From Octopus sinensis (taxonomy: Eukaryota), in assembly GCF_006345805.1 (NCBI RefSeq), contig NC_043007.1, forward strand, positions 24,056,001 to 24,120,000: a stretch of DNA of 64,000 nt, written 5' to 3'. This document shows positions 18,061-40,500 of this stretch, in pieces. Position 1 is the first letter of the stretch. Every line of letters starts with the position of its first letter. The translations under genes were made by a program, and so were the position numbers. The notes under the pieces are model-generated. The model saw only the letters and a list, made by a program, of their open reading frames with translations, was not told where the DNA came from and did not search any database.

Positions 18061-18172
18061 TATTACCACTTAAGTTCAGTGTCGATGCTCCACAACTGCT
18101 TTCAGCCTACCTTATTCTATTTCTCATTCATATATAACTTCTGAATGTGCGTACGCGCGTGTGTATTATGTA

Positions 18173-18398: not shown

Positions 18399-18681
18399 AT
18401 ATATACTCGTTTTCGTGGATATTACATATGAATTTTACGTATATATACATGCATATATATACATATTATATATATATATATATATATATATACACAAAAA
18501 TGACCCGGACAGTAGGTAATCCAGTGTGGAGTTCATAGTTGGAATTCCGAGGTCAAATCCTGACGTCTCCAGATACAAATACACTCAAACTTTTATCTCA
18601 TCAACTTACCTGTCGCTTCTTCCCTTCTTAACCACCCCACTCTCATAGAAAAGCATTCCAACCTGGTTTCTAACCGTTCAC

Positions 18682-19245
18682 TCCTTTGTTATCGTTTGGT
18701 TTAGGTTTAAGAGTTCAAAGTGGACTAAACCTTTCATATCCCACCAAACAGATAACAACTTACGTGGGTGAAGACCTTTAACATGGGGTACCGGTGTTTC
18801 TCCTTTCCCTACCCATTGTCTTCGGCGCTTGACATTTTTATAGGGAACTCATTTCTCGTCACCAGTCACTATTCGGTCGAAAAAAGGTTCATTTGTGAGA
18901 CATAACAGCAAAGAAGAACACACATTCACTCTCTGCGTACGATTAGACTCGGAAAGTTTGTGAGAAATCCATTGACCCAGTTTGCTGACTTTCCGATTGT
19001 ACGCAGGTGTCGATGAATGGTTGAATGAGCAAATCCAAGCTTTTCTGCTAGTTCCTCAACAGTTACAATGGGATTTTGTTCCACCGGGATTTGCTGGATG
19101 TTCTCGTCGAGCTCTATAGATCTTCAAGGACGAGACTCGTCTTCTAGGTTGTAGTTTCCGGTTCGTAATTTCTGGAGGCACCGTTGACACTGGCTTACGC
19201 TTATTGTCCGATCCCCATATGCTGCATTAATATGTTCCAGCCTCG
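18682..19245 (-). mobile_element. Decayed mariner transposase fragment
   Basis: NAAYGDRT, LEDESRP, EELAEKLGFAHSTIHRHL, DRIVTGDEK, LSVWWDMKGLVHFELL. Confidence 0.9.
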
Positions 19246-19249
19246 TTGT

Positions 19250-20310: not shown

Positions 20311-20733
20311 CTATAAACACATCACACACACACACGCACGCAAACAAAATACATTTTAATAAATACATATAAGATTGGTTGTTTTTTTTAGCTTTTCCGT
20401 CTCCATTTAAAATTTTTTTATACTACTGTATATAACTTTTTCTGACATTACTCGCGCAACACTTGTATACGTAAAAACAAAGGCATTAACGTTGAAGCAG
20501 AACTTTTATATAAACAAGTGATTCAGGAACAATAGAAAGGAAAAAAACACTGATAGATCTGAAGAATAAACTTATCAAATTACGTAAACAACATACATTA
20601 TAGCCTGATCAGGGAAAACCCGTGATCTCATTGAACTATATGGTCCAATTCATGTTAGCATTAGTGATTCATGCATATGTGTGCATGCGCAGCCATATCT
20701 TTCTAATTGTCTTGTATTATTTGTACACGTTAA

Positions 20734-21232
20734 GGCGGTGAGCTGGCAGAAACGTTAGCACGCCGGGCATAATGTGTAGCTATATTTCGTCCGCCGTTAC
20801 GTCCTGAGTTCAAATTCTGCCGAGGTCGACTTTGCCTTTCATCCTTTCGGGGTCGATAAATTAAGTACCAGTTACGCACTGGGGTCGATGTAATCAACTT
20901 AATCTGTTTGTCCCCTCTTTGTTTAGCCCCTTGTGGGTAGTAAAGAAATAGGTATTTCCTCTGCCGTTACGATCTGAGTTCAAATACCGCCGAGGTCGAC
21001 TTTGCCTTTCATCCTTTCGGGGTCGATAAATTAAGTACCAGTTACGCACTGGGGTCGATGTAATCAACTTAATCTGTTCGTCTGTCCTTGTTTGTCCCCT
21101 CTTTGTTTAGCCCCTTGTGGGTAGTAAAGAAATAGGTATTTCGTCTGCCGTTACGATCTGAGTTCAAATACCGCCGAGGTCGACTTTGCCTTTCATCCTT
21201 TCGGGGTCGATTAAATAAGCACCAGTTACGCA
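20734..21232 (+). mobile_element. SINE-A head plus tandem units (third unit truncated)
   Basis: Junctions at 20951/20952 and about 21135. Confidence 0.9.
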
Positions 21233-21731
21233 CTATATAAAGACACACACACACACACACGACAGGCTTCTTTCGGTTTCCGCCTACCAAATCCACTCAC
21301 AAGGCTTTGGTCGGCCTGAGGCTGTAGCAGAAGACACTTGCTCAAGGTGCCACGCAAGCTTCTTACCACTAGCCACGCCTTCTTTTACTCGTTTCAGCCA
21401 TGCGGATGAAGGCGCATGGCTCAGTGGTTAGAGCGTGGGGCTCACAATCATGAGGTAGTGAGTTCGATTCTCGTACCAGGCCGTATGTGTGTGTGTGACA
21501 CTTTTTTCGCGTTGCTCCAGTTCACTCAGCTGTAGAAATGAGTTTGATAACATCACTGGTGTGGAGAGGAGAGGCTGGTATGCATGGGCGACTGCTGGTC
21601 TTCCATAAACAACCTTGCCTGGACTTGTGCCTTGGAGGGTGACTTTCTAGGTGCAATCCCGTGGTCAGTCATGACCGAAGGGGGTCTTTATATGTATATA
21701 TATGTATTTATATAATACACACACATACATA

Positions 21732-21958
21732 TAGTGGCGTAGGCCGGTTTATGGGGTTACCCTGGGTTTCTCGCTCATAAGAGGTTTAGCCTTACGGAGT
21801 ATCTTCAGACCCCAAACACTGCTGGCCTGAGACCTCTTTAAAATAATTTAAAGACGTCTCAGGCCAGCAGTGTTTGGGGTTTGAAGATATGCCATAAAGC
21901 TAAATTCCTTATGAGCGAGAAACCGAAGGTAACTTCATAAACCGGCCTACTCTACTAC
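21732..21958. repeat. Fold-back palindrome (about 110-bp arms, 4-nt loop), probable MITE
   Basis: Left arm ...cagaccccaaacactgctggcctgagacctctttaaa mirrors tttaaagacgtctcaggccagcagtgtttggggtttg... over the whole length with scattered mismatches. Confidence 0.85.
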
Positions 21959-24149
21959 AGGGGCAGACTGAGTCGTCAGTCTGTAGGGCACTGCCCGAAG
22001 GGCCAGAGCTCTGAGGGCCCCGCACTGTATATGTTAACTCTACTAAAACGCACATTCAAGGGGGCCCGGTAAACAGTTATGCCCGAGTGCCCTTAATACT
22101 CCGAATCCACCTCTGCCCCATTATAGTATTAACTGCTTTAGATCTTAGAGTGTGCTTCTCCAGATTTATGTTTTTCTATAAACTAATATATATACATAAT
22201 GTTTGGCATATATACACACACATATATATATATACATAATGTTTGTGTGTAAGCGTGTGTGTCTGTTTGTCCCCACTACCACTTGACAACCGTTGCTGGT
22301 TTGTTTACTTAGTAGTTTAGCAAAAAGAAGCTGATAGAATAAATACAAAGCTTTAAAAAAAATAAGTACTTAGGTTCGAGTAACCCTTCAGGGCGGTAAC
22401 CCAGTATGACCACAGTGCAATAACAAAAACAAATAAAAGATACCCTTTTCCTTTCCCATGATTTCAAGAGGCAGCTGTATGTCTCTTGTTGACGCCATCC
22501 TACAATTTTCACAGTTAAAGTACAAGATGGTTCTATAATAGACACGAAAACGTACTTAATATCCCATTCACTAAGCTGTTATCACTTTCCCCTCTCAAAA
22601 TTCACAATTTTAGTACAAGTTAGCTCCTGACACGAACGCATTGTCAATGGATAGAATTGAGCGAAGGTCAGGAACTTAATTTCCCTGTCACTGCCCGCCG
22701 TGTGAAAATTTCTGGCCCTAAAACGAAAGCTTTTTGCCAAACTGAAAATTTGTGGTTGATGTGAATATTATTTTATTTATTTACTGAAAAAATGATAGTT
22801 TCTAGGAAAGTGAAAGCGTCGTCAGAGATGCCTACGATAAAACGATGCCTGTTTGCACTAAACTGATATAAATACATATCCTGAACTAAACATTAAACCA
22901 CATCCGTTGGCGAGTCTCCAGCACGAAATTTAGAAGTTTCGAAGGCTATAGAGATATGCTTTAGTCTCTACAATTCCTGGATCTACTCCGGCTCGGGGTG
23001 GTAGTACCTGTCAAGGGTCTCAACTAATAGCAGAAAATTGTTCTGTGGTTAAGAGATACGAGCTTGACGTAGGATTGACTATAGATGTATGTGGCATAGA
23101 TCCAATGGTTTGTGAATATGCCCTGATATTATGTAAACCAGTGCCTCCTGTCTAAGGTCTAAATAGGCCTTGTGCTTCAAAGTTTAAGCTCAGAGGAGCA
23201 CAAGACGAGCAGAGCAAATAGTAAATAAGCCAGTAGAAGGTAATGGGGTAACCCACTGCTGTATTTTTACCGAGAAAAATCACGATTCTTCTTACTCTAG
23301 CATAGATGCCTAAAGACATGGGTGGATAGAAAGAGAGATGTATTTTTAATATATATTCGTGAACTGAAGGCGGCGAGATGGCAGAATTGTTACCGTCCCA
23401 GACAAAATGCTTAACGGCATTTCGTCCGTTTTCCCGTTCTGAGTTCAAATTCCGTCGAGGTCGACTTTGCTTTTCATCTTTTCGGAGCCGATAAGATATG
23501 TATCAGTTGAGGGCTGGGGTCAATTTAAACGATTTACTCCCTCCCAGGAATTTGCTGGCCTTGTGGCAAAATTTGAAATCAATGTTTATTCGCATGTTTT
23601 TTTTTTTAATTTCTTTACTTTACTTGTTTCAGTCATTTGACTGCGGCCATGCTGGAGCACCGCCTTTAGTCGAATCAAATCGACCGCAGGACTTATTCTT
23701 TGTAAGCCTAGTACATATTCTGTCGGTCTCTTTTGCCGAACCGCTAAGTTACGGGGACCTAAACACACCAGCATCGGTTGTCAAGCGATGTTGGGGGGAC
23801 AAACATATACACACACATACGTATACATATATACGACGAGCTTCTTTCAGTTTCCATCTATCAAATCCACTCACAAGGCTTTGGTCGGCCCGAGGCTATA
23901 GTAGAAGTCACTTGCCCAAGGTTCCACGCAGTTGGACTGAACCCAGAACCATATGGTTGGTAAGCAAGCTACATACCACACAGCCACCCCTGCTAATAAT
24001 TTACATTTCTGATATACAGTAATCTCTCGACTGTCGCAGCTGTTATGTTTCAAAACCACCCGCGAAGTAGAAACAATACAGTATGTATTTATTTCATTAT
24101 AAATGCAAAACAACACCACGGAGGAATCGACGTAAGCTTAAATAATCCT

Positions 24150-24548
24150 TTTTACTATAGGCGCAAGGCCTGGAATTTTGGGGCAGGGGATTAGTCGATA
24201 ATATCGATCCCAGCATGTAACTGGTACTTAATTTATCGACCCCGAAAGGGTGAAATGCAAAGTCAACCTAAGCAAAATTTGAACTCAGAACGTAACGGCA
24301 GACGAAATACCTATTTCTTTACTACCCACAAGGGGATAAACACAAAGGGGACGAACAAGGACAGACAAACGGATTAAGTCGATTACATCGACTCCAGTGC
24401 GTAACTGGTACTTATTTAATCGACCCCCGAAAGGATGAAAGGCAAAGTTGACTTCAGCAGAATTTGAACTCAGAACGTAGCGACATGCGAAATATCGCTA
24501 AGCATTTTTCGTCCGGCGTGCTAACGGTTCTCCCAGCTCGCTGCCTTT
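24150..24548 (-). mobile_element. SINE-A dimer ending in an A' tail
   Basis: Reverse complement of the same junction at about 24311. Confidence 0.85.
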
Positions 24549-25921
24549 CAATATGGTTAAATAATACACCGCGATATGGCGAGAAATTACTGTATACCCT
24601 AGTATATACTGATGTTTGCAGACAGTTAAAAACGGTTTTGTTTTGTCCTAGCTAAACTCCAAACATACTTAATTAACTATTCACTTTAATTTTATTTATT
24701 CCTCAACGGAGAAGCGTTCAGTTTAGCCCGGGAAGCGGGATTCTAAATTCCCGAACCGCTTTCCCATAGCCCGGCAATTATGAAACAAAGTGACCTTATC
24801 AGACACTTTCTGTGGACGTTGTTAATCAAAAAAAAAAAAAAAATCCGAATAGATTTTGAACAAATCGATAAATCGAAAACGAAAGTACACAAATACTTAC
24901 TGGAATATTTGGCATTCACACAAGTTTCATTATCGAATACTTTCGGATCTTTTTTTTTTATATCATGTGTGTGTGTGGTGTACTTTACAAATGTGCCAAA
25001 GTTATCTTATAACTTATATTATATAATAACTGTGTTGTGTAGGAAAAGTCAAACCAAGCCATAATTCTAAGCAGGTCCACCTTAATTCACCTTGACTGTC
25101 GCTGATGTGGGTTTTTTTAAATCCTTCGCCAGCATACGCACTCGTAGACACTATGTAACGAAAATGAATACCTTTACAAGCGTCGTCCCCCCTCGACTTT
25201 GTTTCCTCATACGTTTCAGAAAAATAGGTATCTTTTAATGAAATTTGCTACAAATACCTTTCACATAGTGCTGACTACGATTATATAGGGATTTTGTTGT
25301 GAAGAATTTCTTTTTCGGAGGCGGTAGTTTCGGATAACTCGCACGGATTGACTTTGTTTTCCCATATCTTTCAGAAAAATCGGTATTTTTTTAATGAAAT
25401 TTCCCACAAATACCTTTCAGATGGTGTAGATTACAATCACTGGCACACATCACATATATTACAAAATGAAACTTAAACTTTTGAAAAAAAATGTGACCAT
25501 GTCAGAATTATATGGTTGGCCGCCCACCATTTTCTTCCCCCTCGCATTGTGGTGCGCCTGAGCACTGTATGCAATAATTTCATTATTATTATTATTATTA
25601 AATTTCGATGTAATCTACGCTATCTGAAAGGTGTTTGTAGAAAATTTTATTTGAAAAAGATACTCATTTTTTTATTCTGAGAGCTCTGAGGTAACAAGGT
25701 AGGATGGGGGCACGTTTGTGTAGGTATGCCTATGGTTTTGTTCATAGCCCAATCCATATGCCCGTCAATCACCAGTAACTGTATTGGCACCTGAACAATT
25801 GATGTATTGCCACTGCATTCCATATTAATTTACTTGTCTGAGCATGTTTTTTTAACATAATTCTTTCTGTTCACTCAAATAACAACCGTTTTCCTGTCTT
25901 TGGTTTCCACAATTAAAGATA

Positions 25922-26352
25922 TTGGCGATCTTTCGTCTCTAGTAGACCTTTCCGTCGATTTCCGTAAAATTTTTTTTTTTTTTTACATATGGGCTTGCGG
26001 GAACTTTTGAAGTAATGAGAGCGAAAGAGACTAAGAGAAAGCGATTGTATGACGAGGGAAGTTCTTTTGAAGTTACCGTGCATGGGAAGCATTGATGTAC
26101 ATGTGTGTGTGTGTGTTTGATGGGGTGTGGGAGACAGACAGTATGTTGTGTAAGTGAAGTGCTTTTGTTAGTGTGTGTGAAGAGACAGAGAGTAATGTGT
26201 GAAAGAGAGAGATAACTGAAATTTTTTACTCGGTGTATGTGTATATGTATGTATATTACTTCAAAAGTTCCCGCAAGCCCATATGTAAAATAAAAAAAAA
26301 ATTTTTTTACGGAAATCGACGGAAAGGTCTACTAGAGACGAAAGATCGCCAA
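25922..26352. mobile_element. MITE with about 95-bp TIRs and a 4-bp GATA target-site duplication
   Basis: TTGGCGATCTTTCGTCTCTAGTAGACC...GGTCTACTAGAGACGAAAGATCGCCAA, with GATA at 25918-25921 and 26353-26356. Confidence 0.9.
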
Positions 26353-26695
26353 GATATTTCTATCACACACCGTGGAGATTATTATCAATAAATATAACTT
26401 TGATTTAATAGTTTCCTCGTTTGTGTGTATTAATTAATATAACATTGAAGTTCCTCATTTCGTTTATTATTTTTCCTTTTAATAAATTAACCTGCAATTG
26501 TTCAGTATCTGTTCCAGATAGAAAAAGGCTGTCCTTATGTCGTTCGGTCATTCGTGAATCTTTTTATGGTCTGTGACGAAACCCTGTGCTTATGCATGTC
26601 TCTTAGAGGGGAGAATGTGTACCTACACAAACACGTATTCATCTCCTTGCCTTCATTCGTTTTGCATTTTTGTGTTACACACACATGCACATACA

Positions 26696-26765
<70 letters not shown>

Positions 26766-27753
26766 GGGTTTTTTCCTTGTGTTATTTGTCCTGTACTCTA
26801 TTTTTTTGTTGTTTAAGAAAAATGTCCAGTTCCTTGGGTAATATATTTATTACATCCGTGACCATCACGTCCTTCAAAGGACAGGATAGTCCACGCATGG
26901 AATGCTTTTGTTATGTATAGGACTACATGTCGAACATCCCACCCCTACCTCATTTAAAACACTTGGATGTGATTTGAGGGCGACTTTACTGCTATTTCCA
27001 CGAGGTCGGTCGACCAAGTTAAAGATTCCTCTCATTGATCCGACTTTTCGTTAGTCTTCAAACAGGATCGAAGTTCCAGAAAAATCTGGAATATTCAAAT
27101 TTATAGAAAACATTAAAAAAAATATCATCATTGGTTGGCGTGTCCTTTGAATGTCCTCTTCATTTATTTATTTTTTTTTCTTTTTTACAACTGACCTGTG
27201 TGTATATGTATGTGTGTGTATATATTTTTATAGATATATAGATAGATATATAAAATAACCTTCACAGTTATCTAACCTATTAGAAATTGCGTTTGAAAGC
27301 AAACACGTGTGTGTCTTTTACACCCCCTCGTGTTTATTATGTATGTATATATATATATATATATATATAGTGTATCTCTCTCTTCTCCAGCACTCTCTAA
27401 CTTCTGCTGTCCTCTTCGTTGCGTGGTTTAACTTCCTCTGCCTAATATCATCCATCATCGCTCTCTTTCTCCCTATCTGACCCTTCTCTTAGAGGGGTAG
27501 AATGTGTACCTACACACACACGTATTCATCTCCTTGCCTTCATTCGTTTTGCATTTTTGTGTTACACACACATACATATACAGTGTGTGTGTGTGGCATT
27601 TATGTGTAATAAAGCCCTCTCTATATAATATAAAAAAATATTTTCAAGTGAAAAACATTTTCAGATTTTTTTTCTCTTATGAGGTTATTCACGCTAACTA
27701 CCTGATAATTTCTTGTTAAGATTTCTTATTAAGATTTTATCCTTAATTGTTAA

Positions 27754-27790
<37 letters not shown>

Positions 27791-28359
27791 TAGGTAACAC
27801 ACTCCCATTCATCCACGTGCTCGAAATCTGGCATTTTTATAGAATAAAGTTGGAAATTATCTAATGGTCCGAAAACTGTAATTCTTCGGATGTGTATGTT
27901 GTTAGGGCCGTAGATTACGATTCAGAAAAGAATATACAAATAATGATAATAATAATATTAAAATTGAAATTATGTTACGCATATGATCGAAATATAAACA
28001 TAAAAATATCGGGCCAAAATATCTTCAAAAGTAGGTCGAAACTAAAAAAAAATTACAAAAGCGAAGGAGAGAAAAACCACACACACACACACCACTTTTT
28101 TCTTTATTTCTTTGTAAAATCATAATCTACGACGTTTGATTTTGAGCCCTAAATAATCTTCATCTGTATCCTGTATGAATAATACTCAAAAATCCCGTTA
28201 TCCAGCTCCACATCGCCTCTTCCCAGCCTTGAAATGTCCGAATCCTGTGTTTGACAGCACAAGGCTAGTTCACCGTCCTGTTGTATAATTTTCTTGCTTC
28301 CGTCCTGTATTCCGAGACATGAAGAAAGATTTATAGCCGCTATTTTGCCCACACTTTCA

Positions 28360-28655
28360 TACATACAAACACGTACGCAACACGCATAGACATAACACAA
28401 TACACACGCGCGTACACTCACTTATACTGTGTAACTGTGACGCACTAACATTTCTAATACTGTATTCCATGTGATGAAATCTGCTACAGTCGTCGGCCAC
28501 TCCCCGCCGCCGTCTTCCTCTTCCTAGTCGTAGCCCATCCATCTCGTCTGTCCGACAGAAGCGAAAGCAAAAAAGTGAACGGCTGTTTAGAAGAAAGTGA
28601 AAGCTGAGCAAAGTGAAAGAGTTGTTTTTGATAATTTTGCTTTATACAAAGGTTA
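28360..28655. promoter_or_regulatory. CpG-island-like segment in ADSS intron 1; putative internal or bidirectional promoter / first exon
   Basis: Non-repeat CpG/GC-rich stretch (gtcgtcggccactccccgccgccgtc...). GTGAGT donor on the - strand at 28421. CpG content appears to fall to its right. Confidence 0.5.
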
Positions 28656-29140
28656 AATGATAAATTGATATTCATTTCTTAGTGTATATAACCACTAACA
28701 TTTCTGATATATATCCAGTTGAGAGCAAAGTTTTCTATATACCCTTCGTTGTACTCTTCTTCTCCAGTCTGGACCCTAAGCATACCATTTGCCATAATGT
28801 ATAAGTTTCATTATATATATATAATCAAAGTAAGCAACAAGAATATCTCCGGTTACTTTGATTATAATCACCCCATGGATTTATATGGATAACACCGTAC
28901 AAAATTCTGGTGCATCTGACTTAAGTACCATATTCATTTGAATCTAAATTTTGCTGAACTTATATATATATATATATAGGCGCAGGAGTAGCTGTCTGGT
29001 AAGTGGGTTGCTTACCAACCACATGGTTCCAGGTTCAGTCCCACTGTGTGGCAACTTGGGCAAGTGTCTTCTACTCTAGCCTCAAGCCAACTAAAGCCTT
29101 GTGAGTGGATTTGGTAGACAGAAACTGAAAGAAGCCTGTT

Positions 29141-29173
<33 letters not shown>

Positions 29174-29689
29174 CATGTGTGTGTGTGTGTATGTATATGT
29201 TTGTGTCTGTGTTTGTCCCCACAACATCGCTTGACAACTGATACTGGTGTGTTTACGTCCCCGTCACTTAGCAGTTCGGCAAGAGAGACTGATAGAATGA
29301 GTACTAGGCTTACAAAGAATAAGTCCAGGGGTAGATTTGCTCGACTAAAGGCAGTGCTCCAGCATGGCCGCAGTCAAATGACTGAAACAAATAAAAGAAA
29401 AATATATATATATATATAGCAAATGAAAGACACAAGATGGAATATAAGAGAATTTATTGTTAACCACGACAATTGTTTCGACACATTCCTCTTGGGTGGG
29501 ACACTCAACAACTGGTTCAGGAGCATCCGGTGGTGTAGATGTATCTCCTCGGGTGATAAATAAATACAACTCGTTAAAATGACTGTTCCGCCGTGTAACT
29601 TTCCGTTTTGTAGAGAGAAAAGCAGCCAGACGGAGAAAAATATTTTCATTTATACAGAATAATCCCATGGATTATTATGTGTGTGGGGT

Positions 29690-29830
29690 CCAGTTAAGAA
29701 AGACACCAACCACAAGATGGCATTCGAAGATCTTCCTAAGGACATAGTGTGGAACACATGCACCAGGTTCTGGAACCATCTTCAAGGTCATGGTGGAAGT
29801 GAGGGCAACTATAGATCATTCAATGAATAT
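29690..29830 (+). mobile_element. Tc1/maT-type transposase C-terminal remnant
   Basis: LPKDIVWNTCTRFWNHLQ...EGNY resembles the end of DD37D/Tc1 transposases. Confidence 0.45.
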
Positions 29831-31361
29831 TAATTTTTCATTTTACTCAATGTAATATACCTTATTTGATGCTATGTAAAATGTACATTTTTTATAAAAA
29901 AAAAATCTCAAAAACTCTGCTCCAGTTCTTTTCTGTGACGTTGGGCATTCCACACTGTGTGATAACTCGTCAACTCAGCAGTACATCTTGGCTCTTCTGT
30001 AATTGGCAAAAAGGCTTGACGAATAATTATTTATAATTATGAATAATTTGGAGTTGTGTCATTAGCATAAAGTGAAAAATAAAAGAACAAAGGAATTTTC
30101 GATATGCTACATTAAATATGATTGGCTCTATTTCACAACTTTACAATTCTCTCTCACAATAAAATACTGTGTCTCTGTTACTCCTTTCATCATGTGAGCC
30201 CCAAAAAACCAACCCCCAGTGACCTGTTGACATATATTTTGTTGGGGGGCTTATGTTAACCCTTTAGTATTTAAACCGGCCATATTCAGCCCAAATATTC
30301 TTGTTCAAACTGGCCAGATCCAGCCTTTCACACCCTTGTTACAATGTCATTCTGAAAATAATCACATCAATTATCAACATCTCAAAGCTATAAGATAATG
30401 CTTAATTTATTCTACAAAATGTGAATAAATAATCATGACATTTGACAGAACAATCTGAATGCTGAAAGGTTAAAGTAGTGAACTGACAAAATTGTTAGAG
30501 TGCCAGATTGCCTTGTGGTTTTTGCTCTCTAGATGCAAAAAATCACTGAGATCAACTTTGCCTTTTTGTCTTCCCTGGGTTGGTAAAGCACCAGTCTTGT
30601 ACTAGGATTCATTCTCCTCCCTCTGGAAGAAATTGGCCCCTGGTGAGAAAAGGGCTTCAGTAGGTCTGTCTTTCAATTGGGGTTCATATGGCCCTTGGGA
30701 GTCCATATAAAATTTATGTGCAATGAATTGGTTTTACAATACATAAAATATTAAATTTTTTTAATACAATACTTAATACTACGTAATTATAAAAATATAA
30801 TGGGATTTTTTAAACGTCAAATAGCTATGGAGGTCCAGTAGGGTTAAATAGGAATCAAAGTGGTCCACAGGCAAAAAAGTGGTTGGAACCCACTAGTCTA
30901 AGACATAAGAGTAACACCATCAGAAGTTGAGCCTAATGCCATATATGTTTGTTTGAATGTGTATGTGTGTAAGGTTAAAGACAGTTCATCCAAACAGCAG
31001 ATCCATTCAGTTGGATTTTTTTTTATCAACTGTGTACATCGTTGAGTCTAGAAGGAAAAATCCTGTGATATCTATAGACAATCAAAGAGAACCGATTGAT
31101 CAAAACCTTGATTAGAATGTAATCCTGTCTGTCTTGTGTCTAAATAAATACGTACATTGATTTTTGTTGCTAACATGTTGGTGTGATTGTATGTTTAAGT
31201 GTGAGAGAAGTGACAATCATTTGAACTTAGTACATTTATAAGCTGACAAACCCTGTAACAGCAAACTGCATTGATTAAAAGTAAACAAAAATCTAGCACA
31301 CTTCAGTAGTATTCAATGGGAAATGCAGTTATCATACATACCTGATTGTGTGTGTATGCAT

Positions 31362-31680
31362 ACAAGGTGCAGTGAATATATTTTCAAAATCATGCAAAAA
31401 TGAAAACAACACTGACATTTCATTTTAACAGATATATTTACCAAAGTTGCATAAGCATATCTTGAAATACTAAAGAGTAAATTTATTCAATAAAATCGCC
31501 ATTGGCTTCAACTATGGCCTCCAGACTCTTCTGGACAGTCTCCTTGTTTAAGGTGGTGAATGCTGCCATAATCCTTGCCTTCAGTTCATCTTTGGTGTTA
31601 TAAGGAGTTTTGTTGGTCTCTCGCTCTACTGCACCCCACACATAATCAAGTGGGTTGCAGTCTGGGGAATATATATATAT
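31362..31680 (-). mobile_element. maT (DD37D)/Tc1-type transposase C-terminus plus end
   Basis: YSPDCNPLDYVWGAVERETNKTPYNTKDELKARI...VEANGDFIE*, with a TIR-like TA|CAAGGTGCAG end near 31362. Confidence 0.8.
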
Positions 31681-31699
31681 ATTATGTACATACACAAAA

Positions 31700-31898
31700 T
31701 ATATATGTATGCATATTAATATTTTTACAGTATATCAGGTTGAGTGAGAAGTAAGCAATGTTTTGAACCATGAATTTGTACAAGATTTTTACAGAGTTTT
31801 GAATTTTTTTTAAAACATTTTTTTGCAATTGTCTCATAATATAGAGTATGTTTTTGCTGAATAAAATTTGTTGAAAAAAAGCTGCAATAATTATGCAC
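31700..31898 (-). mobile_element. Hsmar1-like mariner 5' end
   Basis: Reverse complement TA|TTGGGTTGGTGCATAATTATTGCAGCTTTTT resembles the Hsmar1-type TIR. Confidence 0.6.
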
Positions 31899-34800
31899 CA
31901 ACCCAATATATGTGTGTGTGTGTCTAGCATGGAAAACGGACATTCAATGATGATGATGATATATATAATGTATGTATGATGTGTGCATGCATAAACAAGA
32001 ATTTCTTTTGTGAAATTCATCAACCCAGTGGGGTAGCTTTACAAGATTGCAGCACTGCAGTGTCTCAAAGTCCTTTTATGCTGGTGAATCACATGAATTA
32101 TGAACATATATCCTGTAAAGAGAAGAGGTGTCCTCCAGTGACAAACAACAGCAATAAAATATTCATGGTTAAACTTATCAGAACATGTTAAGAATGAAGA
32201 GTTACACTATTGTTTGGATTTTTGCTCTTCTGCTTGCAACCCATAAATTATTGTATTTTAGTTCCAAGATACAGCCCACGGACGCTCTAGAATGCTTCAT
32301 CACTTAGGTTTCTGGGATCTCAGTGGTTTCAGGTCTTTCAACATTAGACCCACTCAGCCTACATTGATCAAGACCCTGCTTGAATCCTAGTTGCTGCAAA
32401 CCACTGGGTCTGCCTGGAATCTTTGATCCTCTTATTTATTTATCTTTTTTCTTTTTGATTGGCCATAAGTAGCTGCGGGCTGGACAAGGACATTAATGTG
32501 ATGAGGACGATAACGATAAAAATGAATAAAAATGGGAGGGGCACTGGTGCCCGCTGACCGATAACTCCTCGAAAACACTGTTCAATTTAAAATCAAGAAA
32601 AATTAATATACAGTAATTAGATACAAGTATAAAAATTCCCAAAAACAAAAATTCGTTTTCCATTCATCTTCCTTGTCCGGGCCCCTAAGTAAGTTTCCTG
32701 CTGCCTGCAGGAAAGCCTGCATTGGCAGGCCCAGACGAAGGGACACAAAATCTTCATTATTACAGGTCCTCCTCACCTCAATTAGTTCTTCTTGGGTGAT
32801 GGCCTCCGTAGCCACCTGCGGAGGCCAACATGGATCGTCTATACAGACCGAGTCGTATCATTCTCGGTCTAAAAGACTATCTGTGATCCTCTTATTTGCT
32901 GCACCAATAACTCCAAGCCCAGTTGGAGCCATATATAAAAGAAAACTTGAATAAATCAAGGTATTTTACAACTGCTAAACACTGATTTCAGATGTTGGCC
33001 CAAAGCCAGCAATTTTGGGGGAGTGTTCAACTGGTACTTATTTTATTGACCCCAAAAGGATGAAAGGCAAAATTGATCCCTGCAGCAGTTGGACTCGGAA
33101 CATAAAGTCAGAAGAATGCTGCTAAGCATTTTTCCTGGTGTGGTGATGATTCTGCCAGCATGCTACCTTAAATAGTTTCAAATTTTGGCACAAGGCCAGC
33201 AATTTCAAGGGAGAGGATAAGTCAACATCAACCTCAGTGCTCAACATGTACGTACTTCATCGACCCCAAAAAGATGAAAGGCAAAGTCGACCTCGGCGGA
33301 ATTCGAACTCGGAACACAAAGACGGATGAAATGCTGTTAAGCATTTTGCCCGGCATATTAATGATTCTGCCAGCTTGCTGCCTACACGACTGCTGAATAT
33401 TAGAGTATGTTTTACTTTATGCTTTCATTCAAACAATACAGTTTGTTTCACTTTGCCAACTTGTATGTCGTGATCATCGTCGTCATGTATGTCTGCACCA
33501 CATAATATGTACAAAGTTTGGAAGATCTTAACAATTTCCTTTAATCAGCCCTGTAATCCTTGATTATCTCATCCTTAAAACACAAGGTATTGAGTACTTT
33601 TATGGGTTTTTTTTTTATATCACAATAAATAAAAACCTAGTACAAATGCATATTACATAGATATTTAGATTATCAAAATACAGAACAAATTATGTCGTGG
33701 GAATTGTATTTTTTTTTTTTTAGTATTTTTGTCACCAAAACTTCAGATATGCTAGGTTTTTGTGTTTTTTACTTTGTGTGTTTTCCTTTGCTTTTTATCT
33801 TTTGTGTTGATATATAAAGCTTATTTATCAATGACTCCTTCTGCTACTCCACCTCTTTATATAGATAATTTCCCATTTTTTTCTCACCATACTATTATAT
33901 CACCAGTTTCAACTGGAGGTCAACATAGTTTCATACATCTTGTTTTGCTAGTTTTTTTTTTGTGTTTTTTAAGAACTCTTGAGAACTCTTCTAGATAACT
34001 TTTGGGGGTTTCTTCTCCTTATCTGACCTCTTCATTGATCTCAAATATCAAAGGAACTTCTTCACTTTAGAGATTTATTTTTGATTAGTTGTTTTGTAAT
34101 AAGATTACATGTAATTTTTTTTTTTTAGTTTCCAGGTTATTAACCTTCCTTTTTAGATATGAAACATAAAGTTGGTGGCTTTGGATTAGTTTCATCTCAG
34201 ATCTTCATTGTGTATCTTATTTGTAAATGTGTTCATCATACCAGGCTTAATTTGAACTGAGATCCTCTATTTCCAAACTAAAGGTAATAATACCAGGCCA
34301 ATTATCCCAGCTTATGTCCATCATGGGGTAATGTGTGCATCCAGGAATAAGATACTTGATGGATGCCCTCTTAGACTTGTGGAGCCAATGTCCTCATTCT
34401 CTTAGACTTACGTAGTTCATGTCCATGCCTTCTCAAAGATCAAAACACAACAGAAATATTGGCATCAAATTTTGGCACAAGGCCAGCAATTTTGGGGAGG
34501 CTAGTCGATTATATTGGTTCTCTTCCTCCCAGTACTCAATTGGTACTCATTTTATCAATCCTGGAAAGATGAGGGGCAAAAATCTACCCCAGTGGCATTT
34601 GAGCACAGAATGTAAAGTCAGAAGACTTGTCCCTAATCATTCTGACAGACATGGTGACGCTTCTGCTAACTTGTTGCCTTACAGCATAGAAATCTCTCTT
34701 TTACTTGTTTCAGTCATTTGACTGCAGCCATGTTAGAACACCACCTTTAGTCGAGCAAATTGACCTCAGGACTTAATCTTTGTAAGCCTAGTACTTATTC

Positions 34801-37462
34801 TATTGGTCTCTTTTGCCGAACTGCTAAGTTACAGGGACGTAAACACACCAGCATTGGTTGTCAAGCGATGTTGAAGGGACAAACACACACACACATATAT
34901 ACATATATACAACGGGCTTCTTTCAGTTTCCGTCTACCAAATCTACTCACAAGGCTTTGGTCGGCTCGAGGCTATAGTAGAAGACACTTGCCCAAGGTGC
35001 CACGCAGTGGGACTGAACCCGAAACCATGTGGTTGGTAAGCAAGCTACTTACCACACAGCCACTCCTACACCTATTGAGAAACATTTCGTATCTGAAGCT
35101 GAGGTTAATAGTTTAAAAAATTTTAAGTCTAAGTAATTGGTTATTGAAATGAACTTTTCATTGAGTTCCCTTCTGTGCCATCACTGATTGTTAGAAGGTT
35201 TAATGTCCAGCCTGTCAGACTGGTAAGGAAGTAATGTCCACTCTCACAGACTTGTATAGTCACTGACCATGGCCTCTTAGACTAGATTCGTGGAGCCAGT
35301 GTTCTGCGGGTAAATAAAATAAGTAACAGCCGAACACTGAGATTTAGATGAATGGCTTCCATCTCCCGCTGAAGATTTCTGGCCCTGTGTCAAAAAAATT
35401 ATAAAGAATTATTATGATGATGATGATGATGATGATAATTATGAGAAATAGGTTTTTAACTTCATTATTAATATAAACAAAAATCTATTTACAGCCCCCC
35501 TCCCTCCCTCACCCCAAACTAACAAACAAAACCAAAACCAAATTTCCTGCAGATTAACTCAGCGTGGAATTAGATTTTTTCTGTTTTTGAGCATGAGAAA
35601 AACAACAAAAGTAAACAAGAAAAAGTGAACCAAAAAAAAAAAAAACCCAATTCCCCGTCACCACCACTACCACCAAATACTTTTCTCACCCAGCTGGAAT
35701 TTGTTAATTACCTCTCCTCCCATTTCTCTAATTTCAAAATTATATATATAATTATATACCATCTGTTATTATAAAATCGAGGATGTTGCTTGTGAAGGCA
35801 CAGGAGTTAGTGTTCATCTAGCGGTTGTAGGTTCAATCCTAGATGAAGCTTTGTCTTATAGGACCCCACCTTTCAGTCATAAAAATGACCGAGGGATTGC
35901 ACCTAGAAAGTTACCTTCTGAGGCACAACTCCAGGCAAGGCTGACAATGGAAGACCAGCAGTCACCCATGAACACCACCCTTCCTTCTCCATGCCAATGA
36001 TGTTAACCAAGGGAAAGGCAAAGGCCGATACCAGGGAAGAGATGACAGAGTTGAGACAATCATGGAAATATATACTGTAAGATACACCAAATTAATTTGC
36101 TTCTTTGGAAAACATATAAACAGATTATTGCCTCCGCCTTAGCGGGTGAGTGAACTGGAGCAACATGAAATAAAGTGTCTTGCTCAAGAACACAACACAC
36201 AGCTCAGTTCTGGAATCGAACTCACTACCTCATGATTGTGAGCCCACTGCTCTAACAACTGAGCCATGCGCCTTCTCTCTCTCTCTCTCTCTTTATATCA
36301 TCATCATCATTTAATGTCCGCTCTCCATGCTGGCATGGGTTGGACGGTTCAACTGGGGTCTGGGAAGCCAGAAGGCTGCACCAGGCCCAGTCTGATCTGG
36401 CAGTGTTTCTACAGGTGGATGCCCTTCCTTACGCCAACCACTCCATGAGTTTAGTGGGTGCTTTTTACGTGCCACTGGCACAGCCAGACGAGGCTGGCAA
36501 ACGGTCATGATCGGATAGTGCTTTTTATGTGCCACCGGCACGGGGACCAGACGAAGCTGGCAATGGCCACGGTCGGATGGTGCTTTTTACGTGACACACA
36601 CACACACACACACACACAGATGGCCTTGTATACGTGTGTGCGGATAGATAAATACATAATGGGCTTCCACACAGTTTCTGTCTACCTAATTCTGCCACAA
36701 GCCATTGGTTGACCCAGGGTTATAGAGGAAGACACATGCTCAAAGATGCTGAGCAGTGGGACTGAACCAGAAACCCCAACATTGCAAAGTGAGCTTCTTA
36801 AAACCACAGCCGCAAAATAACCTTCTTAACATGTCCATGTCCTTATGTAACATCTGCGCAGCACAGAATCATAAGTTGATCCCAAATGATCCTGTAAGCT
36901 ATTTACAGTCCAAGCTGGCCAGACCAGCCATGCTGGCTGTTGACTACGACTGTTGACAGCCCATGTATTAGATTTTGCGGTGGAATCAGTGTTGCTATAG
37001 GGCCAGTTGTTATGGGAGAAAACAAATCTGGTGTTTGCAGTGAAAGCTGTAATAGAGTGGGGCGTGTGCAGCTTAGCTCACTTATCAAGACTGGATGTTT
37101 GACAAGTGGTTTTGCAGCTTATAGGAGATTTCAGTTAGTGAACAGCCAAGTTGCACCTGCAGACGTTTGGTAAACTGCTGGACAATGTCTTACTATGGTT
37201 TACTATGGCTGTAAAGGGAAATATATATATATATAGCATAATCAATATGTGTATGTGTGTGTGTAAAACTGATGATGGTTGGTGATAAAAGGGACCAGAT
37301 GCCTTTCCCATTGCCAAAGCTAAACTGTGATGGCATGGTGAAATGGACATTGAATAAATGAGCTTATATTTGTGCATATATTTATTCATGTGTCCATATG
37401 TGTGTGTGTGTGCCTGTGTGTATGCATATACTTATGTTTATATGTATCTACATGTATGTGCA

Positions 37463-37501
<39 letters not shown>

Positions 37502-40500
37502 GTACATATGTATATATATATATAAAATGATAAACGCTGCCCTTTCAAGCCTAGCCAGGCTCATGGGCCGGGTTTCCCGGTTTCTGTTGCGTATGTGTTC
37601 TCCCCAGCTGGACGGGACGCCAGTCCATCGCAGCGTTACTCAAGAAACAGGAAGACAGAGTGAGAGAATGTTGTGGCGAAAGGGTACAACAGAGGTCACC
37701 ACCATGCCCTGCCGGAGCCTTGTGGAGCTTTTAGGTGTTTTCGCTCAATAAACACACAATGCTCGGTCTGGGAATCGAAACCGTGAGTCCGCTGCCCTAA
37801 CCACTGGGCCATTGCGCCTCCGCACACACACACACACATATATAAATACATACATATATACATACATACATACATACATACATAGATGTATGTATATATA
37901 TATATATATATACATATATACATAGATGTATGCATTTGATTATATGTGTGTATGTATGCATATGTGTATTTATACATGCACAAACATGCATACAAATAAT
38001 CACGTATCACGTATATCTAAGAATAGTCAGGTAGTGTCTTGGATAATTTCCAGAAGCGTACCTCACAGGATGTTGTGTCCTATGCCCTCTGCTTGCGAAA
38101 CTTGAGTAAACCTGTTAAGAGATCTCATTCATGACAGCAGGTGGTTTTTATACATCGCATTGCAGTTACATATGTCATTTCCTGCAATCCATTTAAATGT
38201 ATGTTTTGTATAATTAAGACAAACTTCAGCTAGGGAAGCTCCACATTTGATATGGGCAGTAATAGTAAAGGAGACAAGCGTTTGTTTGTTAGAGGCTTGC
38301 ATGCCTGCCTTACCATGTGTCTTTTGTGCCTGACATGTGGTATATTGCTCACTGGTTTCAGGTTACGTAATTAGGACTAAAGAGTTGGGTGAACTCTGAG
38401 CAAACTTGAAATAAACCTTTTATGAAGATTCTTAATTAACAATGCGTTTTTTCTTTCTTGTATCTAAGTTTTGTAGCAGGAAAATTCAGATGAATGGAAC
38501 AAGGATGAAGTATGTTGCTAGTGATCCCTTAGGGCTTTGCACATGGGAAACTTATTATTCAATGCTCACATGTTCTCATTGGGAGTCTGTGTGTGTGTAT
38601 GTATGTACGTATATCCCTCTCACTCACTCCTTCACTTACACACACACACTATGGGCTTCTTTCAGTCTCTATCCAACAAATCCATTCTCAAGACCTTGGT
38701 TGGCTTGAAGCTATAGCAGAAGACACTTTCCCAAGCTGCTGTACAGAAGAACTAAACCCCAAACCTAATGGTTGGGAAGTGAATTTAACAACGCAGCCAT
38801 TCCTGCACCTTATTATCAATAATCTATATGTGCATGCGCAAATTACATGGGTCACAAAAGTGTTCAGCTTTCTCCAAATCCATTGATTTAATTAAATTGA
38901 ATTAATTATATATCAATAATAATAATAATATCATAGCAAATACTGGGTTAAATTAATTATATATATATATATTTCTTTACTACCCACAAGGGGCTAAACA
39001 CAGAGGGGACAAACAGATTAAGTCAATTACATCGACCCTAGTGTGTAACTGGTACTTAATTTATCGACCCCGGAATTTGAACTCAGAACGTAACGGCAGA
39101 CGAAATATGGCTATGCATTTTGCCTGGCGTGCTAATGTTTCTGCCAGCTCGCCGCCTTTAAATTAATTATATATATATATATAATCTCACTGGTGATGGC
39201 TAGTGGTTAGCTGGGACGTCTAACCACTCATTCCAACTATATAACTATGTTGTCTATAGCTATGTAAAATGGATATCAAACAGCAGAACAAAGTACCAGT
39301 CATATAGGGGTATTGACTAGCCCCCTCTTTTCAAACTGTTGACCATGTGCCTAAATTAAAAACTTATTATTATTATGGCAGATTTGTTTAGTATTTGCCA
39401 TTATTATTATTATTTTGTTGGCCTTGCCACAGCAGTACAGTGCAGTGCAAAATCTAAAACCAGATTAGCATATAATCCAGATATTGGTGAGTTGATCTTA
39501 AAAAAAAAAGTTTTAAACAGCTAAATATAGGATAACACAAATTGTTGTGATGTAGCCACAAATAAGTCCTGATCTAGTTCTGCTACAGCAACCAGCTAGT
39601 TGTAGCAACATAGCCTGGGGTAAGCCCTAATCAAGATATCCCTGATCAAGCCGTTCTAAGCTATGCAATTAACAAGTCAAGCGATGCGGCATTATTCACA
39701 GATCTTCTTTTCAGTTCTTCCATGCCTTCTAGCTTAGGAACCATTCTATGCTTTCTAATCTGCAATGACGTATCCATATGGGATGCAGTGTGATATCTTA
39801 GACTTATTGCGCTCTGTTTCTTGTACACCCAAAGAATTTGGTGGTGACGAAAATGAGTTGAGCAAGGTAAACTCTCAGAACACTATAGTTGGTGTTCTTC
39901 TGAACTTATGGGTGGTGTATATCCCACCACTGTTTTTGTTTTTTCTGTGTGGCTATTGATATTTTGTATGTGTTTGTACATGTTCCATTTGTTTAGTAGA
40001 GCAGTGTGGGAGATATGTTTTTATTGTAATAGTACATCAGAGATGTGTGTCAGTGTTTAAAAGTAGTTTTTTTGTAAGCTTTTAAGCATTAAGTCTTTGC
40101 TGTAAAAACATACTGTTTCTTGCATTTCCCCGGTAGATATTTTTTTTAGTGTTTTACATATAGTCAAGTTGTCCCTAGGCCATAGTTTGATATCTGCCCT
40201 TCTTTCCACTCAGCACAAAGCCTGGAGTCATGTGATTCTAGAATAAACTTGTGATCGCACAGCCACACTTCTGCTAAACACACACACACTGTTGGAAAAT
40301 GAAAATTTTTCTGAACATTATTAGTTGGAAATTCTTGTTTCCTCTCTTATATATCAATCCATGCCAACATAATTGGCAGAGCACGGCAGAATCAATAGAC
40401 CATCGATCTTTATGGTATTGAGTTTTATTCTGATTGTATGCTTTTATGCCCTGGTCAACTTTTGCCTTTCACCTTCCACAAGGTCAATAAAGTGAGTAGC

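What the first reader, a model, noticed from the sequence alone, without database searches (positions are those of the whole stretch)
28360..29700. CpG-rich to CpG-poor switch in mid-intron 1 points to a hidden internal promoter or nested transcription unit
Seen (by eye, not counted): from 1 to about 28.6 kb unique DNA and even old repeats keep many CpGs, while from about 29 kb to the end CpG is scarce. The SINE-B at 8286 reads actgCGtgg..ctCGggcCGacc..agaCGg..gccCGcCG. The copy at 28979 reads actgTGtgg..ctCAagcCAac..agaCAg..gccTGtTG. Some younger right-hand copies (34.7 kb, 61 kb) keep CpGs. The switch follows a CpG-island-like segment at 28.4-28.6 kb. Established: invertebrate methylation is mostly gene-body, starts downstream of constitutive promoters and erodes CpG. 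Inference: the methylated unit begins at 28.5 kb, 14 kb downstream of the exon with the essential P-loop. I found no second WGDEGKG exon in 28.6-45.6 kb. A transcript from here would be non-coding or give an N-truncated, catalytically dead ADSS (first in-frame ATG in exon 4). Alternatives are an antisense gene ending near 29 kb or an assembly join.
Basis: partly seen in the sequence, partly recalled or inferred. Interest (0 to 1): 0.72.

Follow-up and report, generated by a model that had tools for sequence, protein, structure and literature searches.

The report
Methylation-domain edge inside octopus ADSS intron
The sharp threefold drop in CpG content in the middle of the first intron of an octopus adenylosuccinate synthetase gene is real and marks where long-term germline gene-body DNA methylation begins, a pattern already described for thousands of octopus genes, and nothing found here shows that a hidden promoter sits there.

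Summary
CpG observed/expected falls from about 0.86 to 0.29 in non-repeat DNA. The single best change point is at 28,583, and the step is at most about 0.75 kb wide. G+C content stays unchanged, and the lost CpGs are matched almost one for one by gained TpG/CpA. SINE copies of matched age lose CpG sites about 2.8 times faster on the right of the step.

The window carries exons 1-7 of an octopod adenylosuccinate synthetase (ADSS) gene on the + strand. The edge lies 14.4 kb into its 31.45-kb intron 1. The only exon encoding the P-loop (the catalytic nucleotide-binding motif GDEGKG) is exon 1 at 13.9 kb.

My best reading is that this is the 5' edge of the gene-body methylation domain of ADSS. The promoter, exon 1 and the proximal part of intron 1 are kept unmethylated. 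[quoted passage not shown]

The hidden-promoter idea could not be tested directly, because no transcript data could be reached. The indirect tests lean against it:
- The T>A skew and the shortage of sense-strand poly(A) signals begin at exon 1, not at 28.5 kb.
- The "CpG island" at 28.4-28.6 kb is no denser than about ten other patches in the left domain.
- No exon, ORF family or RNA family was found at the edge.

Overall this is an ordinary instance of a known pattern. What fixes the edge at this position remains unknown.

The parts
1..28580 (.). CpG-rich domain, inferred to be unmethylated in the germline. It covers the upstream DNA, the ADSS promoter, exon 1 and the proximal 14.4 kb of intron 1, and it runs off the left end of the window.
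   Evidence: CpG o/e is 0.81-0.86 in non-repeat DNA and P(G|C) is 0.176. Old SINE copies keep about half of their CpG sites. In the 1-kb alignment with a related octopod, CpG is conserved as well as GpC (67% against 64%).
28326..28580 (.). Last CpG-dense patch before the drop (17 CpG per 250 bp, G+C 46%). It is single-copy within the window.
   Evidence: It has no other copy in the window. Its ORFs have no Pfam hit or protein homologue. A YY1-like AAGACGGCGGC lies on the minus strand at 28506.
28581..29650 (.). Transition zone. 28.6-29.2 kb is already CpG-poor (4 CpG in about 640 bp). 29.2-29.65 kb still holds 16 CpG, in a SINE tail and a neighbouring single-copy stretch of unknown origin.
   Evidence: The change point is 28,583 with all DNA and about 29,645 with repeats masked; the step is at most 0.75 kb wide.
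29651..64000 (.). CpG-depleted domain, inferred to be methylated in the germline as gene-body methylation. It covers the distal part of intron 1 and exons 2-7 and runs off the right end of the window.
   Evidence: CpG o/e is 0.28-0.29 in non-repeat DNA, and TpG and CpA o/e are 1.33 and 1.28. Exons 2-7 have CpG o/e 0.51, against 1.09 for exon 1. SINE CpG decay is 2.8 times faster than on the left.
13826..13903 (+). Probable ADSS core promoter and 5' UTR. It is CpG-dense and has an NRF1-like half palindrome (CGCATGCGCG) at 13879.
   Evidence: Sequence read, motif scan and CpG rank (20 CpG per 250 bp at 13826-14075). It aligns to the related octopod contig L001. The TSS itself is inferred, not shown.
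13904..14155 (+). ADSS exon 1, coding part: 84 codons from the ATG to ...CRCQ. It contains the only P-loop (GDEGKG) in the window and is followed by a GTAAGT donor.
   Evidence: 120 ADSS N-termini all map here. The orthologous ORF P0001 of a related octopod is 91-92% identical in protein.
45608..45710 (+). ADSS exon 2 (GGNNAGHT...DVIIG), in phase with exon 1.
47386..47499 (+). ADSS exon 3.
52825..52882 (+). ADSS exon 4. It holds the first in-frame ATG after exon 1.
55309..55354 (+). ADSS exon 5 (GTTKKGIGPTYASK).
56668..56729 (+). ADSS exon 6.
59793..59874 (+). ADSS exon 7. Its 3' end is less certain because the donor (GTTGGC) is weak.
28979..29400 (+). Octopus SINE copy just right of the edge. 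The head (28979-29145) has lost 7 of 7 CpG sites at only 5% non-CpG divergence. The tail (29200-29400) keeps 6 of 12.

Best explanation
The step is the 5' edge of a germline gene-body methylation domain that belongs to the ADSS transcription unit itself.

**Proposed mechanism**
- ADSS is transcribed from its CpG-rich promoter at about 13.9 kb.
- The promoter, exon 1 and the first 14-15 kb of intron 1 stay unmethylated over evolutionary time and so keep their CpGs.
- From 28.6-29.6 kb onward the transcribed DNA is methylated. This includes exons, unique intron DNA and any transposon copies that landed there. Its CpGs therefore decay to TpG/CpA.

**What is shown and what is inferred**
- Shown: the composition step, its sharpness, the mass balance, the age-controlled SINE decay, the gene model, and that exon 1 is the only P-loop exon in the window.
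- Inferred from established knowledge: 5-methylcytosine deaminates to T, and invertebrate methylation is laid down on transcribed gene bodies by DNMT3 reading transcription-coupled histone marks. It is excluded from H3K4-methylated promoter-proximal chromatin.
- Inferred without a test: the unmethylated promoter-proximal zone of this gene is unusually long, and its end is pinned by a local element, possibly the CpG-dense patch at 28.33-28.58 kb.
For: - **Size of the step:** it is threefold in unique DNA with G+C unchanged.
- **Mass balance:** the CpG loss equals the TpG+CpA gain.
- **Passive methylation of inserts:** SINE copies decay 2.8 times faster per unit of age on the right (p = 0.0005). 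This is what passive methylation of inserts inside a methylated domain predicts (the same was reported for Ciona, PMC3827831).
- **Sharp edge:** the edge is sharp, as in the Ciona sperm methylome (PMC3827831).
- **Exon 1 is a genuine, constrained exon:** exon 1 and its promoter have CpG o/e 1.1-1.3. Between two octopods about 14% diverged, CpGs there are conserved as well as GpCs. Exon 1 is in phase with exon 2 and is the only P-loop exon, so functional ADSS mRNA must start at or before 13.9 kb.
- **Sense transcription starts at exon 1:** the + strand T>A skew starts at exon 1 and is as large in 14-28.6 kb as further right. Sense poly(A) hexamers are depleted in 14-28.6 kb. On the right, TpG exceeds CpA on the + strand (1916 against 1599), as expected if the + strand is the non-template strand.
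- **A known class in octopus:** the O. bimaculoides WGBS study defines a class of 6,545 transcripts with an unmethylated first third and a methylated 3' part. The pattern is stable across tissues (PMC9476566). Nautilus also has a hypomethylated promoter and first exon (PMC12532940).
Against: - In Ciona the unmethylated zone reaches only about 1 kb past the TSS, and promoters are thought to shape the 5' edge. A 14.4-kb offset with a sub-kilobase edge in mid-intron therefore needs an extra, unidentified determinant.
- From my own knowledge of the vertebrate literature, the switch to H3K36me3 is often placed at the first 3' splice site. That would predict 45.6 kb, not 28.6 kb.
- The skew and poly(A)-signal tests rest on small numbers (P about 0.02 each), and the two tests are not independent.
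- Methylation is inferred from sequence decay only.
Confidence: 0.55

Rival explanations
1. A hidden internal promoter or nested + strand transcription unit lies at about 28.4-28.6 kb. It would be constitutively active in the germline. It would produce a non-coding RNA or a P-loop-less ADSS transcript spliced to exon 2, and it would set the start of gene-body methylation.
For: - The methylated domain starts directly after a single-copy CpG-dense patch.
- In Ciona the 5' edges of methylated domains are shaped by promoters (PMC3827831).
- The SINE head just right of the edge has lost 7/7 CpGs at 5% divergence. Under the right-domain decay rate this has a probability of about 0.004 (my calculation from the figures). 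It would fit peak methylation just inside a 5' edge.
- The octopus class with an unmethylated first third has no published mechanism and could partly reflect unannotated internal TSSs.
Against: - The T>A skew and sense poly(A)-signal depletion begin at exon 1, with no increase at 28.6 kb.
- The patch is only about the 11th densest CpG patch and lacks NRF1, ETS, SP, CRE and NFY motifs. Its one YY1-like site points the other way.
- In Ciona the unmethylated zone extends about 1 kb downstream of a TSS, whereas here depletion starts within about 100 bp of the patch.
- Any product would lack the P-loop.
- No supporting homologue or transcript could be retrieved.
Confidence: 0.2
2. A discrete intronic regulatory block or boundary element lies here without being a TSS. 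In this reading 14-28.6 kb is an unmethylated regulatory valley. It could be an enhancer cluster, or a CXXC- or TF-bound region that may belong to ADSS or to an upstream neighbour. The patch at 28.3-28.6 kb would be its edge.
For: - The unmethylated domain is continuous from the window start through the ADSS promoter to 28.58 kb, at least 28.5 kb in all.
- The edge is sharp.
- The patch is single-copy within the window.
Against: - No conservation data could be obtained for 14.8-28.6 kb.
- About a quarter of 14.16-28.58 kb is tandem or within-window repeated DNA, which is not what a dense regulatory block looks like.
- This differs from the best explanation only in what pins the edge.
Confidence: 0.12
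3. An overlapping antisense (minus-strand) gene has its 3' end near 29 kb, and its body, rather than ADSS, carries the methylation.
For: It would explain a domain edge unrelated to ADSS exon structure. Tail-to-tail genes can share one methylated domain in Ciona.
Against: - The right domain has T>A on the + strand (+0.05 to +0.06) and TpG>CpA on the + strand. Both point to + strand transcription.
- No minus-strand ORF with a Pfam family was found, apart from one weak transposase (DDE) remnant.
- ADSS exons 2-7 alone suffice to explain a methylated body.
Confidence: 0.05
4. An assembly join or a recent rearrangement brought together DNA from an unmethylated locus and a methylated locus at about 28.6-29 kb.
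For: The change is abrupt, and the edge is flanked by (TA)n and (TG)n microsatellites and a SINE.
Against: - There are no Ns.
- Exon 1 is on the same strand as exon 2 and in phase with it, and it is the only P-loop exon.
- SINE ages are similar on the two sides (mean divergence 0.10 against 0.12).
- G+C and repeat fraction are the same on both sides.
- A mid-gene start of methylation is common in octopus.
Confidence: 0.04

Closest known systems
Octopus bimaculoides 'Methylation Pattern 3' genes (Macchi, Edsinger and Sadler 2022, BMC Biol, PMC9476566)
   Same: The 5' part of the gene body is unmethylated and the downstream part is methylated. The pattern is reported as stable across tissues, and here it is read from CpG decay in what is evidently an octopod genome.
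   Different: That class was defined by WGBS in 30 bins per transcript, whereas here methylation is inferred from sequence. The 3' end of ADSS is outside the window, so the unmethylated fraction is unknown. The paper gives no single-gene edges or mechanism. ADSS was not found in its supplementary tables.
Mosaic methylated and unmethylated domains of Ciona intestinalis (Suzuki et al. 2013, PMC3827831)
   Same: Domains are all-or-none with sharp boundaries. The methylated domain sits over a gene body with the promoter unmethylated. Transposon copies inside methylated introns are passively methylated, while copies outside are not.
   Different: In Ciona the unmethylated 5' zone reaches only about 1 kb past the TSS. 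Here it reaches 14.7 kb past the start codon and ends in mid-intron.
Intragenic CpG-island promoters (alternative or orphan TSSs inside genes)
   Same: An unmethylated CpG-dense patch lies inside a gene, followed by methylated DNA.
   Different: Here the patch is the end of a continuous unmethylated domain of at least 28.5 kb, not an island in methylated DNA. It is not denser than its left-hand surroundings, and no TSS evidence exists.

Membership tests
Invertebrate germline gene-body methylation domain (inferred from CpG decay) | CpG o/e is strongly depleted inside the domain and near 1 outside, with G+C content similar | tested here: met
   0.28-0.29 against 0.81-0.86 in non-repeat DNA; G+C 35-39% on both sides
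Invertebrate germline gene-body methylation domain (inferred from CpG decay) | A reciprocal excess of TpG and CpA | tested here: met
   -23.6 CpG per kb against +24.6 TpG+CpA per kb; TpG and CpA o/e are 1.33 and 1.28 on the right against 1.07 and 1.06 on the left
Invertebrate germline gene-body methylation domain (inferred from CpG decay) | The domain overlaps the transcribed body of a constitutively used gene, with the promoter and first exon spared | tested here: met
   ADSS exons 2-7 lie inside (CpG o/e 0.51). Exon 1 and the promoter lie outside (1.09-1.29), and their CpGs are conserved like GpCs between two octopods. Constitutive expression is assumed from the enzyme's role and was not measured.
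Invertebrate germline gene-body methylation domain (inferred from CpG decay) | Transposon copies inside the domain are methylated passively and decay; copies outside do not | tested here: met
   CpG-site loss per unit of divergence is 11.1 inside and 4.0 outside; permutation p = 0.0005
Invertebrate germline gene-body methylation domain (inferred from CpG decay) | A sharp domain boundary | tested here: met
   Logistic width at most 0.75 kb; widths of 1.5 kb or more rejected
Invertebrate germline gene-body methylation domain (inferred from CpG decay) | 5-methylcytosine actually present in germ cells | not testable with these tools
   No bisulfite, EM-seq or nanopore data were reachable
Octopus MP3-type gene (unmethylated first third, methylated 3' part) | The 5' portion of the gene body is unmethylated well beyond the promoter | tested here: met
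   By proxy: 14.4 kb of intron 1 has CpG o/e 0.86
Octopus MP3-type gene (unmethylated first third, methylated 3' part) | The 3' part of the gene and the TTS are methylated, and the unmethylated share is about one third | tested here: inconclusive
   Exons 2-7 are depleted, but the window ends after exon 7, so gene length and TTS are unknown
Octopus MP3-type gene (unmethylated first third, methylated 3' part) | Assignment to the class by WGBS clustering | not testable with these tools
   ADSS was not found in the paper's supplementary files, and the species of the window is not established
Internal (alternative) promoter | Transcription initiation at the site (capped 5' ends, or a first exon spliced to exon 2) | not testable with these tools
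   No octopus ADSS transcript or protein was returned. Exact look-ups of ORFs at the patch and of the exon-1 ORF found nothing.
Internal (alternative) promoter | A local CpG or G+C peak standing out from its surroundings | tested here: not met
   17 CpG per 250 bp is about the 11th densest patch in the window; 3% of left-domain windows have 18 or more and 8% have 16 or more
Internal (alternative) promoter | Transcription-linked strand asymmetry begins at the site | tested here: not met
   T>A skew is +0.008 upstream of exon 1, +0.076 in 14.16-28.58 kb and +0.050 in 28.58-45.6 kb. Sense poly(A)-hexamer depletion is seen in 14.16-28.58 kb but not in 28.58-45.6 kb. Both tests have low power.
Internal (alternative) promoter | Recognisable promoter motifs in the sense orientation | tested here: inconclusive
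   No NRF1, ETS, SP, CRE or NFY consensus; one YY1-like site on the minus strand at 28506 and one ISRE-like GAAAGTGAAAG at 28593. Motif matches are weak evidence either way.
Assembly join | Discontinuity in gene structure, repeat age or composition across the point | tested here: not met
   Exon 1 and exon 2 are on the same strand and in phase; SINE ages, G+C and repeat fraction are alike on both sides; no Ns. Read-level support was not testable.

The most novel reading that the evidence does not exclude
The edge may be set by a discrete, unannotated element at 28.33-28.58 kb. This could be either a germline-active non-coding TSS or a methylation insulator. The same kind of element might then explain the whole class of about 6,500 octopus genes whose first third escapes gene-body methylation. 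If so, CpG-decay change points could be used to map such elements genome-wide from sequence alone.
Probability: 0.2. Interest if true: 0.5.

Novelty: new member of a known kind. Interest (0 to 1): 0.3.

Why it matters
As it stands this is a clean single-locus example of a known genome feature. It shows a sharp edge of a gene-body methylation domain, readable from sequence alone. It also shows an essential housekeeping gene whose first 14-15 kb of transcribed DNA has escaped methylation for a long time.

It matters mainly as a worked example. Change-point analysis of CpG decay, combined with age-matched repeat copies, places such an edge within a zone of about 1 kb (28.58-29.65 kb).

What positions the 5' edge of gene-body methylation far from the TSS in cephalopods is unexplained in the papers I read. 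Candidate edges like this one could be tested with CAGE and chromatin profiling.

Tried and rejected
- **Octopus ADSS transcripts or proteins.** I made two protein searches, one with exons 1-2 and one with exons 1-7. The best full hits were only 62-71% identical. The sole octopod hit was a genomic exon-1 ORF from another species (P0001, contigs L001 and L002), which reads through into the intron and so says nothing about splicing.\n- **Exact look-ups.** Two ORFs across the patch and the window's own exon-1 ORF are not on record in public assemblies.\n- **Homologues of the patch.** All stop-free segments of 28.12-28.8 kb in six frames gave nothing at E <= 0.001.
Full report
**What the window is.** The abundant repeat has a tRNA-like head, a (TA)n/(TG)n spacer and a tail of about 200 bp. 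From my own knowledge it is the characteristic SINE of Octopus genomes. The + strand carries the first seven exons of an adenylosuccinate synthetase (ADSS) gene:
- exon 1: 13904-14155
- exon 2: 45608-45710
- exon 3: 47386-47499
- exon 4: 52825-52882
- exon 5: 55309-55354
- exon 6: 56668-56729
- exon 7: 59793-59874

Exon 1 runs from the ATG to ...CRCQ, contains the P-loop GDEGKG and is followed by a GTAAGT donor. All splice phases fit. Intron 1 is 31,452 nt long. A tblastn of 120 ADSS N-terminal sequences and a motif search both find a single P-loop exon. No other convincing gene is present: the long ORFs are SINE or microsatellite read-throughs and decayed transposase remnants. No Rfam family and no tRNA were found.

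- In 1-kb windows, CpG o/e is mostly 0.67-1.3 up to 29 kb and 0.10-0.65 afterwards.
- Treating each C as a trial, the single best change point is 28,583. The log-likelihood ratio is 145.6 and the 2-log-unit support is 28,556-28,765.
- After masking tandem repeats and everything repeated within the window, o/e is 0.81 (upstream), 0.86 (14.16-28.58 kb), 0.29 (28.58-45.6 kb) and 0.28 (45.7-64 kb). G+C is essentially constant.
- The right side has 23.6 fewer CpG per kb and 24.6 more TpG+CpA per kb, which is the signature of 5-methylcytosine deamination.
- A logistic fit shows the step is at most about 0.75 kb wide; 1.5 kb or more is rejected.
- With repeats masked the best edge moves to about 29.65 kb. 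This is because 29.2-29.65 kb, made of a SINE tail and a neighbouring single-copy stretch, still holds 16 CpGs. I therefore describe a transition zone of 28.58-29.65 kb.

**Age-controlled test with repeats.** I aligned 18 SINE heads (7 ancestral CpG sites) and 15 tails (12 sites). For each piece I scored the CpG sites kept against non-CpG divergence from the consensus.
The young copies at 34.9 and 61.0 kb keep 6/7 and 5/7.
- Fitting P(kept) = exp(-k*d) gives k = 4.0 left of the edge and 11.1 right of it (likelihood-ratio statistic 27.7, permutation p = 0.0005).
- For pieces with d > 0.08, the left keeps 30 and loses 26, while the right keeps 9 and loses 47.
- Mean ages are alike on the two sides, 0.10 and 0.12.

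So the difference is one of decay rate, not of DNA age. This matches what was reported for transposon copies inside and outside methylated domains in Ciona (PMC3827831).

**The left domain near exon 1 in a second species.** Logan contigs L001 and L002 come from another octopod. They cover the promoter, exon 1 and about 630 nt of intron 1, and are 86% identical to the window over aligned columns. In that alignment CpG dinucleotides are conserved 67% of the time, the same as GpC (64%) and other dinucleotides (60-73%). CpG is therefore not hypermutable there, as expected for DNA unmethylated in both lineages. The exon-1 protein is 91-92% identical, so the exon is under constraint.

**Is there a hidden promoter at 28.4-28.6 kb?** I could not test this directly.
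- No octopus ADSS transcript or protein was returned by two searches.
- Exact look-ups of ORFs across the patch and of the window's exon-1 ORF found nothing.
- A six-frame search with the patch found no relative.

The indirect tests lean against it.
1. The patch has 17 CpG per 250 bp, about the 11th densest in the window. Between 3% and 8% of left-domain windows are as dense, depending on the cut-off. It is simply the last piece of a domain in which all DNA has CpG o/e near 0.9.
2. It has no NRF1, ETS, SP, CRE or NFY consensus. The real ADSS promoter does have an NRF1-like CGCATGCGCG at 13879. The patch's only notable matches are a YY1-like AAGACGGCGGC on the minus strand and an ISRE-like GAAAGTGAAAG.
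3. In non-repeat DNA the + strand T>A skew is as follows (500-bp block bootstrap):
   - +0.008 (95% CI -0.04 to 0.06) upstream of exon 1
   - +0.076 (0.03 to 0.12) in 14.16-28.58 kb
   - +0.050 in 28.58-45.6 kb
   - +0.060 further right

   P(first intron half <= upstream) is 0.02. If, as in mammals (my own knowledge: Touchon and colleagues), this skew reflects germline transcription of the + strand, then transcription starts at exon 1 and gains nothing at 28.6 kb.
4. Counts of AATAAA+ATTAAA on the sense strand against the antisense strand are:
   - 23/22 upstream
   - 21/40 in 14.16-28.58 kb
   - 30/28 in 28.58-45.6 kb
   - 31/45 beyond

   The depletion of sense poly(A) signals is thus seen just downstream of exon 1, not just downstream of the patch. 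Tests 3 and 4 are low-powered and not independent.
5. On the right, TpG exceeds CpA on the + strand (1916 against 1599). This fits + strand transcription and argues against an antisense gene as the carrier of methylation.

**What the literature says.**
- In O. bimaculoides, WGBS clustering gave four stable methylation patterns. [quoted passage not shown] Another has 8,972 transcripts lacking methylation at the TSS and promoter (PMC9476566).
- Nautilus has a hypomethylated promoter and first exon (PMC12532940).
- In Ciona sperm, domains are all-or-none with sharp edges and the edge is unrelated to the start codon. Intronic transposon copies are passively methylated. A transgene promoter created an unmethylated zone from about 0.8 kb upstream to 1 kb downstream of its TSS, so promoters help to shape 5' edges (PMC3827831).
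- In a cnidarian, re-methylation tracks transcription-coupled marks (H3K79me2/3 and H3K36me3) (PMC13345969).

Together these papers make a methylation start well inside the gene ordinary for an octopus.

**Best explanation and rivals.**
- **Ordinary 5' edge of ADSS gene-body methylation (0.55).** A long promoter-proximal zone of about 14.7 kb from the start codon is kept unmethylated.
- **Hidden germline TSS at the patch (0.20).**
- **Non-promoter boundary or regulatory block (0.12).**
- **Antisense gene ending near 29 kb (0.05).**
- **Assembly join or recent rearrangement (0.04).**

What fixes the edge at this exact place is not explained by anything I found. An offset of this size, with an edge narrower than 1 kb in mid-intron, is the one unusual aspect.

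**Verdict.** This is a new member of a known kind and of modest interest.

Noticed in passing
window 28979-29400: The SINE head (28979-29145) has lost all 7 CpG sites at only 5% non-CpG divergence. Its own tail (29200-29400) keeps 6 of 12, and right-domain heads of similar age keep 5-6 of 7. Either decay is strongest in the first few hundred bases inside the edge, or head and tail have different histories.
   Followed up: partly
window 28443-28459 and 28693-28709: A 17-nt direct repeat, CACTAACATTTCT(A/G)ATA, occurs 250 bp apart. It brackets the CpG-dense 3' half of the patch and the exact change point. By my rough estimate well under 0.1 such pairs are expected by chance in 2.7 kb. It may be a target-site duplication or an old local duplication, but I saw no poly(A) or terminal repeats.
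   Followed up: partly
window 13879-13888: An NRF1-like palindromic half site (CGCATGCGCG) lies about 25 nt upstream of the ADSS start codon, inside the second densest CpG patch of the window (20 CpG per 250 bp). This is typical of a housekeeping promoter.
   Followed up: partly
window 14160-28580: Sense-strand poly(A) hexamers are depleted (AATAAA+ATTAAA 21, against 40 on the antisense strand). C exceeds G (GC skew -0.08) while T exceeds A. The GC skew sign is opposite to the mammalian transcription-linked pattern and is unexplained.
   Followed up: partly
window 29651-64000: In non-repeat DNA of the CpG-poor domain, TpG outnumbers CpA on the + strand (1916 against 1599; on the left 1212 against 1164). 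This suggests more 5mC deamination on the non-template strand of ADSS.
   Followed up: partly
window 49433-53580: A secondary CpG-richer stretch lies inside the depleted domain (P(G|C) 0.134, against 0.05-0.07 around it). It is 66% repeat DNA (several SINE copies), so it mostly reflects inserts that have not yet decayed rather than a second unmethylated domain.
   Followed up: yes
window 7927-10191 and 31486-31734: Decayed mariner/Tc1-like transposase remnants, for example ...PYSPDLAPADFHLF... and ...PYSPDIARSDFHLF..., recognised by eye. Pfam gave only sub-threshold hits: DDE_3 (E = 0.011) at 31.5 kb and an HTH (E = 0.01) at 9.0-9.3 kb.
   Followed up: partly
window 2000-3200: A CT/GA-rich simple-sequence block with extreme skews (GC skew +0.37, TA skew -0.19) and low CpG o/e (0.38). 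The cause is low complexity, not methylation decay. It is the one low window in the CpG-rich domain.
   Followed up: no
protein database searches: No cephalopod ADSS protein appeared among the hits listed by the protein searches, although ADSS proteins from many other animals did. The window's own exon-1 ORF is also not on record. The only octopod sequence found was a genomic exon-1 read-through ORF (P0001, samples SRR11869391 and SRR11869384).
   Followed up: no
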